The translations under genes were made by a program, and so were the position numbers. A model generated the notes under the pieces. The model was not told the origin of the DNA, did not search any database, and saw only the letters and a program-made list of their open reading frames with translations. A DNA stretch of 63,916 nt, the filler included, from Platydemus manokwari (taxonomy: Eukaryota), in NCBI GenBank assembly GCA_037951405.1. It is 5 parts of 5 records of this genome, joined end to end, with 100 filler letters (N's around TTAATTAATTAA, not from the genome) between each part and the next. Parts side by side here need not be neighbours in the genome. Positions count along the whole stretch, not along the records: positions 26,093 to 45,818 come from JBBMOY011666957.1; 4 more parts are not named here. One strand, 5' to 3'. Shown piece after piece: positions 31,023 through 36,930 of this stretch. How positions within the stretch are numbered: position 1 is the stretch's first letter; each line of letters starts with the position of its first letter.

Positions 31023-31793
31023 TCAAAGATGCGCCGTGACTTCACCAACTTTTCGAGAGGGATGTTTAAAAGTGCAGGCCTTTGTATGAAATTTTAAAGC
31101 ATCAGGATTGAAAGTACGTTGACAAAGTGGACAAGGCACGAGATTTTGATTATATGCTGCAGCATTCAGATCATTCATTGCTGCTTGCTGGGTATATTCT
31201 TTGTGTCCTTCTAACTTTTTCTCTTTCACCATTTGTTCTAAGAGTTCTTTGTTGGTTTGTGGTTTCACTGGTTCGGGTCGACGTTCTTTTTTAGGTAACT
31301 CATTGTTCTGTTTCCGAAACTTTTCCAGGCATAATTTTTCATGGATATCAATCGACGTCGTACCAAAGTTTCTGCCACAAATATAACAAACAACACCGGG
31401 TAATCGTCCTACATGCGTCGGCCCGGCATCATGTTTACGTTGTGCTTCTTGTTCTTTTAGTTCTCGTTCTGCCTTCTTATCGCATGCTACTTTATGCTTA
31501 TCAATTGAATGAATGGTAAATGTTTTTCCACACGTTTTGCACACGACAAAGTTAGATTTTGGAATGCTATTAAAGCTAGTATTGTTATCAGACGAAGCAT
31601 CATCAGTTAAACTAATATCGGCAAACGAAGGTAGATTGATATCATCTGGAGTTTCGTCTTTAAAATGAATCATTTTTGATTTAGGTGTTGTAGGACGTGT
31701 CAACGGATTCTTGCCTCGACATATTTTCTCGTGAACACTTAAACTCTGTGTGTTAAATGATCTGTTACACTTACTGCATTGAGCTAAAGACAT
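31023..31793 (-). CDS. ZNF474: ZNF474-like C2HC zinc-finger protein, 256 aa, intronless
   Basis: Four C-x2-C-x11-H-x3-C fingers; ZNF474-type block VVCYICGRNFGTTSIDIHEKLCLEKF..N..LPK..RRPEP.KP and terminal NLVPCPLCQRTFNPDALKFHTKAC; ATG in AAAA context, TGA stop. Confidence 0.85.
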   Translation of the reverse strand: MSLAQCSKCNRSFNTQSLSVHEKICRGKNPLTRPTTPKSKMIHFKDETPDDINLPSFADISLTDDASSDNNTSFNSIPKSNFVVCKTCGKTFTIHSIDKHKVACDKKAERELKEQEAQRKHDAGPTHVGRLPGVVCYICGRNFGTTSIDIHEKLCLEKFRKQNNELPKKERRPEPVKPQTNKELLEQMVKEKKLEGHKEYTQQAAMNDLNAAAYNQNLVPCPLCQRTFNPDALKFHTKACTFKHPSRKVGEVTAHL

Positions 31794-34202
31794 TTTTAAG
31801 CATTGTTAATCGATAATATAATAATAATAACAATCCAATAATTCATAATTTGAAAAAATCAGTAGGTTATTAAATAATATAGTTTCAGAAACTATAAAGA
31901 TTACTTGTAAAAAATAACATGCTGCAAAAATACTCAAATAATAAAAATAAACTATTGCTGATTAAAATGCTCTGTTTTACTGATTTTTGCGAGTTGGATT
32001 TTGTTTAATATATAAAATTACAAAAGATTATGAAGGCATTTAAAGATAATCCACTAAATGGTGGCATTATTCGATGAAGAAACAACGCATTATGTAAGAG
32101 GTTGAATATCCGTTGAAATTTTCTTTAATGATAATAATATATTAAATAAATAAATATAAATTAGCCAGAAATATCATAGAATCATTTTATCATTTTTTCT
32201 AATAAATTAAATGAATTTTTATTCCAAATCGTCTTCAAGGGCACTTCAAAAAACATTGGAAATAAAAGATAATTTCATGGGTTGAGAGGAAATATTGAAA
32301 TACTCGACTTTCTGGTAAAAGCGGATAAGACTCAAAGGAATTATAAATTTATTCCAATTTCAAAATACAATCATAAAAATTTGACCGATGTCTTAGGAAG
32401 AAAATTACTAACAAGCTAAAATGTAATTTTTATTAAAAAAAATTATTATTATTGTGACATATATATATATATATATATAGTGTGTGTGTATATTTATTTA
32501 AATCCGAACATATTTACAGATACTTTTGAATAAATAAATCTTAATATTATTTCAATATAACAATTATTTTAACCTCTATATATTATAATGATTTGATAAT
32601 TCCAATATTTCGAATTATTATTGGCTCTATGTTTCTCAATTGGTATATTCTATTTAGTTCGTGCTTTTTCAAACTTATTTTAAAGAGCCATTTAAACTTT
32701 AATTCAACATTTGTGACGACATTAATTTATTCAATAACAATCCTCTTTAAAAGTCGACAATTTTATGTAATATTATATTCCACTTACATTCCGTTTCAGA
32801 AATCTTTCTAAAATTAATTATGATTCATTTTTCCTATGATTATGTGAAATTTATTTTTGACAATAAACTATTAATTAAAATAAAATAATAAGAAATATTT
32901 TATTTTGTAAAACTTGTCAAAATTCTTTTAATATTATGAATCAAATGATAAAGTGTTCTCTTAAGTTTGCATTGATTTAAAATAACAAAATAGGAAAGTG
33001 TATCTACGACATAAAAAAATCTAAAATATACATTAACGATGTACTATACATTATGCAAATATAATATAACCAGTACAAGTATATTATGTTCCATTCGGCC
33101 CACAATTGATTTTACCGTGATGATTCTGACTTGATTTCCTTTGACTATTCGACATTATTCACTATTATTTCAAGAAACCTTCGTTTACTTTTAGAATGTT
33201 ATAGAAACTATATAATTATTTATAATTTCTTAAAACTTATATTAATCAACAATGAAGATTATCGAATTTATGGTCGATCATGAGCCATATTCAAATTATA
33301 GTATTGAATATTATGGAAAAAACAAATTTATTAAAAGCCTTTGTGTTTTGTTTTTTAAACGCAGTTAATTAAATCATACAGCACTCGCATGTTATGTCAA
33401 TCACAGCAGTTTTATCGCCTCACTTGCAGAACCCAACAATATGAACATTTCGATTTTATCAGAAACTGAAAAATATGAATGACTAAAAATGACCACATAA
33501 ATTTGATGACAGTTTAACAAGACTTTAACAAATGAAGAACGTAAATAGATATCGAAATCGATGGCATCCCTGCCATTACTGGCTGAGGATTTATCGAAAA
33601 TAATTGATTAAATTGATACAAAACATACAATAAACCCAGTATATTTTCGATGTCCTTGTTTTCGATAAAACTTCTGACCTTTAGATATAAGAATAAATAT
33701 AAAATTCAATATTAAATCATCTCTTCGAATATCGAATGATCTAACTCGAAATCCTATCAACAAGATTTTCAATAATTCATTCAGCTTTTCGGACAATAAA
33801 ATAGGAAAACAATATTTGTTGTTTAGTGATCAATAATTTTGTTTGAAGGTAAACACGTGCTATCATAATATAGAATAATTACCCAACAAATATTATGGTA
33901 AGAGATGCGAGAATTTGATAACTGAAGCCTTGCAGCCTCTAATAAGTACTCAAACAGTCTCATAGTTCTTTCTACTTACCGGTATCGGACAACATCTCGA
34001 ATTCACTGTCACTTCTGATATCTGATATTGAACTTGAGAATAAAAAAATATAATATGAATAGATAACACAAGTATTTATTTATTGGTAAAATAAATTTTA
34101 ATGAATACAATATGTAAAGAATAAAATGATGAAAAAATTATAAAATTTTTTCTAATAATCAAAAATATAAATTAATTAATGATAAGAATCGCAAATAAGT
34201 TC

Positions 34203-36183
34203 CTACAGAATTTTTGTCTTACTGATCAATGAATTGAGAAGATTCACCTCTTCTCCTTCACTGTCACTGAAAGGTCTGTCGTAATTTACTGAATACACGT
34301 TTCTACTGTTCGATCTTGAGCAGTTATTTACATTTCGGTGATTGAAATCTATTGTATTTTCCTGTGAATATTGAATTGAGTTATCAGTTGTATCATAATC
34401 AACATTTAATTCATAAGAATTTTGTAACATAGAATCATTGGTATTCAACAAGTTGACACTATCGACGGATGATGATGATGATGATGACAAAAAGTTCAAG
34501 CATTGACATTTTGATTTTTCAGTCAATTCTGTCTTCGTTTTCGTTTTACCGCTTCCAATACTTACAATGGATTGCGCAATATGATTGGTTTTAGTGTATC
34601 TATTGTTCATCGCTCTATTATTTAATCGTAATAAAAGATTTGAAGTGTTGGAACCATCTTCTCCCTTATTGTCATCGGCTTCGTTGATGACTACTGTTGG
34701 ATTTCCAATTTCTCCTCCTTCTGCTTCTGCTTGATCCTTTTTTTGTTTACTATCATATGCTCCTTGTAATAGTTGTGTATCGACTGAAACTTCTTCGTAG
34801 TCTTTCGCTAGTGTTGCTAGGTTATATAATGCTTCACAAAATTCACTTTCTTCTAAACCTTCACCAACAAACCAGTGTACAAAGCTTCTTTTGGCATAAA
34901 GTCGATGAAATCTTTGAGCCAACCGTTGCCAAACTGCACTAACAGATGAAGAATTAGTCATCATAACAACACTACAGTTTGTTTGACCCATTTGACTTTG
35001 TGGTAATATTAAAGGTGGTTGATCGATGATTCCCACTTTGAATCCTGTCGGACACCAATCGACAAAAGTGTGCATTCTAGAAGACTTTATTTCGGAGAGA
35101 GTAGAATATATCTCACTTGTATTAACTAAGCCTCGATAGACTAAAGAACAAGCCATGTACTTTCCATTAAATGGGTTACATTTAATCAATTGATGGTTCA
35201 ATTCGAACACCGATCTAGTAATATCAGTTATTGTATTTATATCTCGTTCAATTTTGGAGGCACATCCTAATGGGGCAAAGCTAACTAGTGGGAAATGTAT
35301 TCTTGGATATGGGACTAGATTTGTCAAAACGGCATTGATATCATTAAACATATCACTATTAAATCTAGATGATGCTGTAATACAGCTATTAACTTGTCCA
35401 AGTATTCGATTTATACTGGTCATTGTTGGATGGGTAATGCTCAAAATATCACACGAAATATCAAATAAAGCTTCATTGTCCAATAATAATCCCACATCGC
35501 ATTCTTCCATACAAAAATGTTCACCTAAAATACTGTTATAAGGTCCTACAACACAGCTGTCGAAGTGAGGAGATGGATGGATGGCTAATTCGAATCTAAT
35601 GACTTTAGAGTATTCCTCCATCAACTCAAAAATCATTGACGTCATTCCGGAGCCCGATCCACCGGCTAATGATCTGTGAAACAAAATTGATTGTAGAGAA
35701 TCGCAAATTTCAATTTGTTTTCTAAGCTTAGTTTCAATAGTATAATAAAGTAATCTTCCCATGGAATTGAATGCTCTGGAAAAATTTCCTGAACTATCAT
35801 CATTGCCATTGATAAGCTGAATTGGATTATACAGTTCTCGATATGCTCCCCTTCTCAATTGGTCTAACAATGGAATACATTAGTAAAAGTAATTTCAAAA
35901 ATAATAATCACCGATAACTGATGGCTCAAGATCAATGAAAAGTCCTCTGGGAACATAGTTGCCACAATGCGATTCTGAGAAAAACGATGAAAAACATCTA
36001 TCACCTTGATCTCTATCTTCAGTCAATTTTCCATCTCGGCTTATTCCATGCTCAGCGCACAATAATTCCCAGTTGGAAAATCCAATTTGATTACCTGCTT
36101 GACCCACGTGAATAGACAAAATCTCTCTCTGAATACGCCAATGTTCAAAAGAATAACTTTCATTAAATCATAATTATTACCAT
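34203..36183 (-). CDS. Divergent alpha-tubulin, ~626 aa; exons 36183-36181, 36128-35912, 35863-34203
   Basis: ATG|gtaata 52-bp intron; REILSIHVGQAGNQIG..WELLCAEHGI...FIDLEPSVI; 48-bp intron (G|gtgatt...ttag|AC); alpha-type [49 protein letters not shown]; then a ~190-aa tail. Confidence 0.93.
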
Positions 36184-36930
36184 TTTTAAACTTTCAAATC
36201 AATAATTAATTTGATTATTGGTTTTTATCTTCATTCAAAAATTATTATTTTCATTATAATTACAACCATACCCCATAAAAACTAATGATACATTCAAGAT
36301 GTTTGAACCATTTGTTCGTTCAGCATCTTGGATAATCTGATAGTTATTTTAGGATATGTTAATTAAATAATTAATAATCTTGGGACCAAATATAAGATAC
36401 TTATCAATCTAGTTAAATTAACTGCTGATCAGTTATCTCTTTTAATTATCTCTGCTTTTTTAATTATCTTTTTCAAAAATTTGAAAATTTCAACTTATGA
36501 AGGAATTTTAAAAATTATTTTCTTATATTTTATTTATATGAAATCGCGCGCAACTTTTAAGTAGTTCTCTAGTCGGTAGCTGACGCTAAGAATTTTGACT
36601 CTCCTATTTAGAATAATTCATTAGAAAAAAATTAATGTCATCAAATACAGAAATTGTTCTTGACATAAAACTCAAGTTACTGTACTTTAATGCTCCAAAA
36701 ATGTATAAAAATAAAAGATAAATATCATAATTTGCGATACATTTTATTTCTACTATAAATGTAATAAATGCTTGATTGAAAACTTTTAAATTTTACTTAT
36801 TTAGTGCCAATACAAGTTTATTATTCATAATCACCAGAAATATTTTTTTTATTGATAGAACTCTTATGCCAGTAGTAGTGAGAGTCCTCAAGTGATTTTA
36901 TCAGTGTATATGCTTCAATGGCCCCGTAAC

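What the first reader, a model, noticed from the sequence alone, without database searches (positions are those of the whole stretch)
35300..35375. Natural E254A alpha-tubulin: catalytic glutamate and T7 loop lost
Seen: the gapless alignment [32 protein letters not shown] versus canonical [32 protein letters not shown] places Ala (GCC, 35333-35331) at E254. The T7 motif GxxNxD becomes SxxFxD. The change from GAR to GCC needs two base substitutions, so a single sequencing error is unlikely. Established: alpha-E254 triggers GTP hydrolysis on the adjacent beta-tubulin, and E254A is the engineered substitution that gives hydrolysis-deficient, hyperstable microtubules. Inference: an intact gene encoding this state could be a dedicated stabilising or capping isotype for non-dynamic arrays (e.g. 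sperm or ciliary structures), or a tubulin that has left the lattice.
Basis: partly seen in the sequence, partly recalled or inferred. Interest (0 to 1): 0.85.

Follow-up and report, generated by a model that had tools for sequence, protein, structure and literature searches.

The report
Flatworm alpha-tubulin lacking catalytic glutamate
This is an intact, strongly conserved flatworm gene for an unusual alpha-tubulin that, like a whole flatworm-wide group of relatives, has lost the glutamate that normally triggers GTP hydrolysis in microtubules, so it may build naturally hyper-stable microtubules, probably in sperm.

Summary
On the minus strand lies an intact three-exon gene (ATG 36183-36181; exon 2 36128-35912; exon 3 35863-34203) for a divergent alpha-tubulin of about 626 aa. 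A gapless alignment to solved alpha-tubulins (E 2e-108, 43% identity) puts Ala, codon GCC 35333-35331, at Glu254, with G246S and N249F and with D251 kept.

It is not an error or a pseudogene. An orthologue from another species, with the same intron positions, also has Ala but uses GCT. In the globular domain pN is 0.075 against pS 0.83. A re-assembly of public reads matches the window exactly.

It is not an isolated oddity. In a tree it sits in a 25-sequence clade (support 91/91) of unnamed, probably free-living flatworm proteins plus trematode, monogenean and cestode alpha-tubulins. All have Ala, Val, Ile or Thr at 254. The Fasciola hepatica member is a testis marker in a published spatial transcriptome.

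The best reading is an old, flatworm-specific, hydrolysis-dead alpha-tubulin isotype, probably for stable microtubules of male germ cells. The gene's identity and conservation are shown. The mechanism, lattice incorporation and expression in this species are inferred; no RNA data were available. I found no paper noting this loss. It is a new variant of a known kind.

The parts
36181..36183 (-). Exon 1: the start codon ATG only, followed by a GT donor
   Evidence: Sequence read. Joining ATG to exon 2 gives M-R-E-I-L-S-I-H-V-G-Q-A-G, the canonical alpha-tubulin N-terminus. The orthologous contig L001 begins at the matching intron donor.
36129..36180 (-). Intron 1 (52 nt, gt...ag)
   Evidence: the acceptor ...tattcag lies directly before AGAGAGATT, and L001 has an intron at the same position.
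35912..36128 (-). Exon 2 (217 nt): residues 2-73 plus the first base of codon 76-equivalent. It holds the T1 loop GQAGNQIG, a shortened H1-S2 loop without K40, and the T2 residues D69 and E71
   Evidence: Pfam Tubulin, E 5.9e-14. Translation and alignment.
35864..35911 (-). Intron 2 (48 nt, gt...ag, phase 1 in the Asp76 codon)
   Evidence: The same position and phase are seen in the orthologue L001 and the paralogue locus L004.
34203..35863 (-). Exon 3: the rest of the GTPase domain, the intermediate and C-terminal domains, a tail of about 190 aa, and the stop codon (34203-34205)
   Evidence: Open reading frame. Pfam Tubulin 1.7e-26 and Tubulin_C 1.5e-35. PDB alpha-tubulin hits at E 2e-108.
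35646..35666 (-). T4 nucleotide-binding signature, read as AGGSGSG where canonical tubulin has GGGTGSG
   Evidence: G142A and T145S are specific to the window + P0034 lineage; the rest of the clade keeps GGGTG.
35319..35357 (-). T7 loop and start of helix H8 (residues 246-258): [13 protein letters not shown]
35331..35333 (-). GCC, the Ala at the position of catalytic Glu254
   Evidence: The orthologue uses GCT at the same place.
34206..34775 (-). Long, non-acidic, low-complexity C-terminal tail (about 190 aa) in place of the short acidic alpha-tubulin tail
   Evidence: The frame stays open in the window and in L001 despite only 44% identity; pN 0.36 is below pS 0.77. Long tails are shared by the 7-member subclade.
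34206..34253 (-). Conserved extreme C-terminal motif: an acidic patch followed by (S/N)-L-(L/M/I)-x-(E/S)-L-(I/S)-x-x-T
   Evidence: The C-termini of the window protein and P0034, P0056, P0061, P0058, P0059 and P0068 are compared.

Best explanation
The locus is an intact three-exon gene for a member of an old, flatworm-specific subfamily of divergent alpha-tubulins. Its common ancestor replaced the catalytic Glu254 of the T7 loop/H8 with a small uncharged residue: Ala here, and Val, Ile or Thr in relatives. Shown: the residue, the gene structure, the purifying selection, the clade-wide absence of Glu254, and testis-enriched expression of the liver-fluke member. Inferred: the protein still folds as an alpha-tubulin, pairs with a beta-tubulin and enters the lattice. 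There it cannot activate hydrolysis of the GTP on the beta-subunit of the dimer below it, so every interdimer contact it makes stays GTP-locked, much as the intradimer N-site does, where beta-tubulin carries Lys at the same position. This would give intrinsically stable, non-dynamic microtubules. Their outer surface would also be remodelled: helix H11/H12 residues are changed, there is no K40, and there is no acidic tyrosinated tail. In this subclade a long tail ends in a conserved short motif that may recruit a partner. The likeliest site of action is the long-lived microtubule arrays of spermatids and sperm (cortical microtubules, the 9+'1' axoneme).
For: Residue and alignment. Gene model with GT-AG introns conserved in the orthologue and a paralogue. 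Purifying selection: globular exon 3 has pN 0.075 against pS 0.83, and exon 2 has 0.126 against 0.87. Ala is kept with a synonymous codon difference, GCC against GCT. Clade: 25 rows with support 91/91, and the window's 7-row subclade at 100/99; all rows lack Glu254. The rest of H8 (T257-F267), D251, the Mg/phosphate residues D69 and E71, N206, N228 and the alpha-type S9-S10 loop are conserved, which suggests interface constraints persist. F. hepatica D915_006002 (A0A4E0RB94, P0179) is listed as a testis cluster marker in PMC11484910 supplementary file 3. Engineered E254A/N tubulin gives catalytically inactive, stable microtubules (PMC7018511, PMC8764682 and PMC11893814, titles and abstracts). 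Flatworm sperm carry parallel cortical microtubules and 9+'1' axonemes (abstracts). An intron-less full-length contig of a subclade member (L003) looks like a spliced mRNA.
Against: There is no RNA evidence for this species: only one DNA-like public run holds the sequence. No test of dimerisation, polymerisation or GTPase was possible. The window + P0034 lineage changed several N-site residues (N101G, G142A, T145S, E183G, Y224M), so structural GTP binding, and hence normal heterodimer formation, is not assured. D251 is retained and might support slow hydrolysis. Testis expression is shown only for a relative with about 48% identity in the sister subclade. The window keeps only 116 of 206 canonical-invariant positions.
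Confidence: 0.5

Rival explanations
1. It is a conserved alpha-tubulin-derived protein that no longer acts as a normal lattice subunit. It might cap an end, sequester or chaperone a beta-tubulin, or serve as a scaffold through its long tail and terminal motif. Loss of Glu254 would then be a consequence of leaving the polymerisation cycle.
For: This lineage has many changes at N-site residues (N101G, G142A, T145S, E183G, Y224M). Thirty-nine canonical-invariant positions are replaced clade-wide, including the H3 and H11/H12 surfaces. A 190-aa tail ends in a conserved terminal motif. The stem branch is long, 0.45.
Against: H8 after residue 256, D251, the M-loop lysine K280, the S9-S10 loop and most of H12 (E415, the DYEE motif) remain conserved. 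That is hard to explain without longitudinal and lateral contacts. The sister subclade has short tails and an intact GGGTG signature yet also lacks Glu254.
Confidence: 0.28
2. It is a lattice subunit with no special effect on stability. It would be a minor isotype diluted among canonical alpha-tubulins, or D251 or another group would sustain hydrolysis. The loss of Glu254 would then be tolerated rather than being the selected function; the selected function would lie in the altered outer surface or the tail.
For: D251 is invariant in almost all clade members. The clade-wide surface changes on H11/H12 and the loss of K40 point to altered MAP, motor or modification interactions.
Against: Position 254 never reverts to Glu or Asp in 25+ sequences across trematodes, cestodes, a monogenean and the unnamed, probably free-living sequences. 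Engineered mosaic lattices containing hydrolysis-deficient tubulin serve as mimics of the stabilising GTP cap (abstract of PMC11893814).
Confidence: 0.17
3. It is a sequencing or assembly artefact, or a decaying pseudogene.
For: No RNA run was found for this species. The sequence is very divergent from canonical alpha-tubulin (43% identity).
Against: The 626-codon frame is intact, with canonical splice sites. pN/pS is about 0.09. The orthologue has the same Ala with a different codon. An independent contig at depth 12 is identical.
Confidence: 0.02

Closest known systems
Canonical alpha-tubulin (e.g. TUBA1A/1B; PDB 6tis_A, 3j8x_A)
   Same: It has the Tubulin and Tubulin_C domains and aligns gaplessly over residues 75-439 at 43% identity (E 2e-108). 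It has the alpha-type S9-S10 loop, the T1, T2 and T6 residues, D251, and H8 from T257 onwards.
   Different: E254A, G246S and N249F. The T4 signature reads AGGSGSG. N101G, E183G and Y224M are changed. The H1-S2 loop is shortened and has no K40. The H11/H12 surface is remodelled. A 190-aa non-acidic tail replaces the acidic tail and there is no terminal Tyr.
Engineered hydrolysis-deficient human alpha-tubulin E254A/E254N (PMC7018511, PMC8764682, PMC11893814)
   Same: It carries the same substitution at the same catalytic position, so it is expected to be unable to trigger hydrolysis of E-site GTP in the neighbouring beta-tubulin.
   Different: Those are single point mutants in an otherwise canonical protein, made in the laboratory. 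This is a natural gene, conserved under selection, with about 57% of other residues changed. Its biochemical behaviour has not been tested.
Parasitic-flatworm 'Tubulin alpha chain' proteins of the same clade (F. hepatica D915_006002/A0A4E0RB94, Clonorchis GAA37663.2, Echinococcus multilocularis CDS39805.1, Hymenolepis CDS29155.1)
   Same: They belong to the same monophyletic clade, have no Glu at 254, and share signature replacements such as Y103F, F141L, G246N/S/T and F255 to an aliphatic residue.
   Different: They have Val at 254, keep GGGTG, E183 and mostly N101 and Y224, and are about 440 aa long with short tails. They share only 47-50% identity with the window protein, which belongs to a separate long-tailed subclade.
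Beta-tubulin T7/H8 (Lys254) at the intradimer N-site
   Same: This is a natural precedent within tubulin. A non-catalytic residue at the T7/H8 position leaves the GTP at that interface permanently unhydrolysed.
   Different: That concerns the intradimer interface of every heterodimer. Here the interdimer interface would be affected, and the residue is a small apolar one rather than Lys.

Membership tests
alpha-tubulin | Tubulin/FtsZ GTPase domain plus the tubulin C-terminal domain | tested here: met
   PF00091 (1.7e-26 for exon 3; 5.9e-14 for exon 2) and PF03953 (1.5e-35).
alpha-tubulin | Closer to alpha- than to beta-tubulin | tested here: met
   every one of the 60 PDB hits shown is an alpha-tubulin; the protein groups with alpha-tubulins, with two beta-tubulin sequences as outgroup (100/100).
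alpha-tubulin | Alpha-specific S9-S10 loop insertion (residues about 361-368) | tested here: met
   the alignment through this region is gapless.
alpha-tubulin | T4 signature GGGTGSG and the N-site contact residues N101, E183 and Y224 | tested here: not met
   AGGSGSG, N101G, E183G, Y224M. Q11, D69, E71, G143, G144, G146, N206 and N228 are kept.
alpha-tubulin | Catalytic Glu254 with the T7 motif G246-x-x-N249-x-D251 | tested here: not met
   S246, F249, D251, A254.
alpha-tubulin | K40 acetylation site and a short acidic C-terminal tail ending in Tyr | tested here: not met
   the loop is shorter and has no Lys at position 40; the tail is 190 aa, non-acidic, and ends in ...KTKIL.
Flatworm Glu254-less divergent alpha-tubulin clade (defined here) | Monophyly with trematode, cestode and monogenean members | tested here: met
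   a 25-row clade with support 91/91, and the window's subclade at 100/99.
Flatworm Glu254-less divergent alpha-tubulin clade (defined here) | A small uncharged residue at 254 and shared signature replacements | tested here: met
   A, V, I or T at 254; Y103F, F141L, G246 to N/S/T, and F255 to I/L/V/M/T.
Flatworm Glu254-less divergent alpha-tubulin clade (defined here) | Testis-enriched expression | not tested
   This is shown only for F. hepatica D915_006002. No RNA run was available for the window's species.
Hydrolysis-dead, lattice-stabilising alpha-tubulin (functional class of the E254A mutant) | Forms a heterodimer with beta-tubulin and polymerises | not testable with these tools
   This needs biochemistry. 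A complex prediction was not run, because any alpha/beta pair would be modelled as a dimer by homology.
Hydrolysis-dead, lattice-stabilising alpha-tubulin (functional class of the E254A mutant) | E-site GTP remains unhydrolysed and catastrophe is suppressed | not testable with these tools
   This needs GTPase and dynamics assays.

The most novel reading that the evidence does not exclude
Flatworms have kept, since before the split of planarians and parasitic Neodermata, a genetically encoded way to make GTP-locked microtubules. It would be a family of alpha-tubulins without the catalytic glutamate, expressed in male germ cells. These would build the permanently stable cortical microtubules and/or the unusual 9+'1' axonemes of flatworm sperm. 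In planarians a long-tailed branch would add a conserved C-terminal docking motif.
Probability: 0.35. Interest if true: 0.8.

Novelty: new variant of a known kind. Interest (0 to 1): 0.62.

Why it matters
Alpha-tubulin Glu254 is treated as the universal trigger of GTP hydrolysis and hence of dynamic instability, and E254A/N tubulins are the standard laboratory tool for mimicking the GTP cap. A natural subfamily without this residue, kept under selection across free-living and parasitic flatworms and testis-enriched in a liver fluke, would be a natural experiment. It could show how cells use hydrolysis-dead tubulin to make stable arrays, which surface and tail changes go with that, and which beta-tubulin partners it uses. 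It could also give a parasite-specific cytoskeletal component tied to fertility in flukes and tapeworms. The genes are already in databases as 'Tubulin alpha chain', but I found no paper that notes the missing catalytic residue.

Tried and rejected
[quoted passage not shown] It is a different protein (A0A4E0S3J4). The true clade member is D915_006002, also a testis marker.
- The five F. hepatica alpha isotypes of Ryan et al. 2008 are 72-95% identical to each other, and the paper does not mention hydrolysis or position 254. Judging by those identities they are probably not this clade.
- Schistosoma japonicum hits are canonical and carry Glu254. I found no schistosome member, but the word-based search cannot prove absence.
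- Only one run, DNA-like and with a coded organism, holds the sequence. So there was no RNA test and no truly independent read support.
'Planarian' is an inference from 27.7% GC, short introns and flatworm nearest relatives.
- JC-corrected dS could not be computed because synonymous sites are saturated (pS > 0.75), so I report pN/pS instead of omega.
- I did not run structure prediction, fold search or complex prediction. The joined three-exon protein was not to be submitted, exon 3 alone lacks the first 75 residues, and an alpha/beta dimer model would pass by homology without changing the odds.
- Pseudogene and sequencing error were considered and rejected.

Full report
**Observation**

The minus strand between 36183 and 34203 carries a tubulin gene. 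The codons for the T7 loop and the start of helix H8 read [13 protein letters not shown], and GCC at 35333-35331 encodes the Ala.

phmmer against all PDB chains returns alpha-tubulins throughout the 60 hits shown (best E 2e-108, 43% identity). It aligns residues 75-439 essentially without gaps. Because D251 and T257-N258-L-V-P-Y-P-R-I-H-F flank the position and are identical, the assignment is unambiguous: G246S, N249F, D251 retained, E254A.

**Gene model**

- The main open frame (35870-34203) is preceded by a 48-nt GT-AG intron (35911-35864).
- Upstream of that is exon 2 (36128-35912), which encodes R-E-I-L-S-I-H-V-G-Q-A-G-N-Q-I-G through E-P-S-V-I.
- Then comes a 52-nt GT-AG intron (36180-36129) and a one-codon first exon, ATG 36183-36181.
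- Pfam finds Tubulin in exons 2 and 3 and Tubulin_C in exon 3.
- The predicted product is about 626 aa.

All searches used single exons by reference.

**Is it real and selected?**

The closest database protein, P0034 (87% identity), lies on a 2-kb Logan contig (L001) from another sample. L001 has introns at the same two positions, so it is genomic DNA of an orthologue.

Nei-Gojobori counts:

| Region | pN | pS |
|---|---|---|
| Globular part of exon 3 | 0.075 | 0.83 |
| Exon 2 | 0.126 | 0.87 |
| Tail | 0.36 | 0.77 |

Synonymous sites are saturated while replacements are rare, which indicates strong purifying selection. The Ala codon is GCC in the window and GCT in L001, so the amino acid is held while the codon drifts.

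One public run holds the stretch. A 3455-nt contig at word depth 12.3 covers 33600-36600, introns included, with no differences. That run may be the assembly's own source, so it counts only as a re-assembly check.

No RNA run was available, so transcription in this species is not shown. A relative, P0068, sits on a 2191-nt contig with an uninterrupted ORF from the ATG and lacks both introns. The simplest reading is a spliced mRNA.

**Relatives**

Searches of 5.8 billion proteins and of 1.84 billion cluster representatives found the nearest relatives. They are unnamed contig or UniParc proteins at 45-58% identity and named flatworm proteins at 44-50%:

- trematodes: Calicophoron, Fasciola, Fasciolopsis, Clonorchis, Opisthorchis, Paragonimus, Echinostoma
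- a monogenean: Protopolystoma
- cestodes: Echinococcus, Taenia, Hymenolepis, Schistocephalus, Spirometra

A careful IQ-TREE analysis places the window protein with P0034 (100/100). That pair sits inside a 7-row long-tailed subclade (100/99), which sits inside a 25-row clade (91/91). The other branch of the clade holds more unnamed sequences and all the Neodermata.

Every member of this clade has Ala, Val, Ile or Thr at 254 and none has Glu or Asp. Canonical alpha-tubulins in the same data sets have Glu (284 motif matches).

P0034 and a paralogue, P0061, come from the same sample. The long-tailed subclade therefore already contains at least two genes per species.

The loss of Glu254 is thus ancestral to a clade that holds Neodermata and relatives of the window's organism. 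From the established flatworm phylogeny, that makes it very old. This last step is inference.

**What else changed**

Clade-wide, 39 positions that are invariant in my canonical sample are replaced. They include:

- G246, V250, E254 and F255 in T7/H8
- Y103F, F141L
- several H3 positions
- a block on the outer H11/H12 surface: E386, D392, D396, G416, R422, E423, D424, A427, E429

The H1-S2 loop is shorter and has no K40.

Conserved features include Q11, D69, E71, G143, G144, G146, N206, N228, D251, H8 from T257, K280, K352, R402, E415 and the D-Y-E-E end of H12.

The window + P0034 lineage alone also changed N101G, G142A, T145S, E183G and Y224M at the non-exchangeable nucleotide site.

The 190-aa tail is non-acidic and poorly conserved. 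It stays open in both species and ends in a motif shared by all seven long-tailed proteins: an acidic patch followed by S-L-M-E-E-L-I-R-I-T or a variant.

**Expression evidence from a relative**

The F. hepatica clade member P0179 is THD23391.1 / A0A4E0RB94. Supplementary file 3 of the F. hepatica spatial transcriptome (PMC11484910) lists A0A4E0RB94 as D915_006002, a marker of the testis cluster, next to radial-spoke and cilia/flagella genes. The gene highlighted in that paper's figure, D915_001685, is a different protein.

**Mechanism**

Established knowledge: alpha-Glu254 of the incoming dimer completes the E-site of the beta-tubulin below and activates hydrolysis, and E254A/N tubulin gives catalytically inactive, stable microtubules (PMC7018511, PMC8764682, PMC10319017, PMC11893814).

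Inference: a natural alpha-tubulin with Ala or Val here, if it still dimerises and polymerises, would leave the GTP beneath it unhydrolysed and act as a built-in stabiliser. Flatworm sperm have long-lived parallel cortical microtubules and 9+'1' axonemes (abstracts). Together with the fluke testis signal, this makes male germ cells the likeliest place of action.

My estimates:

- about 0.9 that the gene is a functional member of a Glu254-less flatworm clade
- about 0.5 for the stabilising-lattice mechanism
- about 0.28 for a non-lattice role, kept alive by the N-site changes in this lineage
- about 0.17 for a lattice role in which the loss is tolerated rather than selected
- about 0.02 for artefact or pseudogene

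**Comparison and novelty**

The protein meets the fold, domain, phylogenetic and S9-S10-loop criteria of alpha-tubulin. It fails the catalytic-Glu, T4-signature, K40 and acidic-tail criteria, so it is best called a divergent alpha-tubulin subfamily. It resembles the engineered E254A mutant only at that residue.

Literature searches found no paper noting natural loss of Glu254 in flatworm alpha-tubulins. The relatives are annotated simply as 'Tubulin alpha chain'. I rate it a new variant of a known kind, with interest 0.62.

**Limits**

- The organism is coded or unnamed. 'Planarian' is inferred from composition (27.7% GC), short introns and nearest relatives.
- There is no RNA and no biochemistry.
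- dS is saturated.
- The tree contains long branches.
- The word-based searches cannot prove absence, for example in schistosomes.

Noticed in passing
window 34206-34253 (-); also the C-termini of P0034, P0056, P0061, P0058, P0059, P0068: After poorly conserved tails of about 150-500 aa, all seven long-tailed proteins end in a conserved short motif: an acidic patch followed by S-L-M-E-E-L-I-R-I-T or a variant. It looks like a docking peptide, and no known motif was matched.
   Followed up: partly
L001 and L004 (both Logan SRR33002330): The same sample holds both the window-type orthologue (P0034, Ala254) and a paralogue (P0061, with a one-residue deletion in T7 and Ile at the 254 position). 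Both have the same phase-1 intron at codon 76, so the long-tailed subclade was duplicated before these species split.
   Followed up: partly
P0272 cluster (includes Fasciolopsis buski KAA0189647.1 = P0358); P0236, P0246, P0248, P0254, P0275, P0263, P0252, P0244: Further very divergent alpha-tubulin-like proteins have Gln, Asp or His at position 254. One group is from a trematode, and several share a UniParc accession range with clade members. Flatworms may therefore carry more than one Glu254-less alpha-tubulin lineage. Their placement in the tree is unresolved because the branches are long.
   Followed up: partly
P0197 (TRO73457.1, labelled Glycocaulis profundi): A 136-aa 'hypothetical protein' of a bacterial assembly carries the cestode-type T7/H8 motif and clusters with Echinococcus/Taenia tubulin. 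This looks like tapeworm DNA contaminating a bacterial genome record. The same 90% cluster also lists unrelated Taenia proteins, so the cluster is impure.
   Followed up: no
window 31023-31793 (-): This is a single-exon ORF of 256 aa with four zf-C2HC_2 zinc fingers (Pfam 4.4e-30), a ZC2HC1-like protein.
   Followed up: partly
window 40698-41186 (-): This ORF of 162 aa holds the CBFB_NFYA domain (Pfam 4.9e-19), and is an exon of an NF-YA CCAAT-binding factor subunit.
   Followed up: partly
window 34460-34496: The reads tool skipped this simple repeat inside the tail-coding region, a poly-Ser run (SSSSSSS). Its copy number could vary between individuals.
   Followed up: no
alpha-tubulin positions 386-429 (helices H11/H12) across the clade: Clade-wide, canonical-invariant surface residues are replaced (E386, D392, D396, G416, R422, E423, D424, A427, E429), mostly by uncharged or hydrophobic residues. 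This implies an altered motor/MAP-binding face in addition to the catalytic change.
   Followed up: partly
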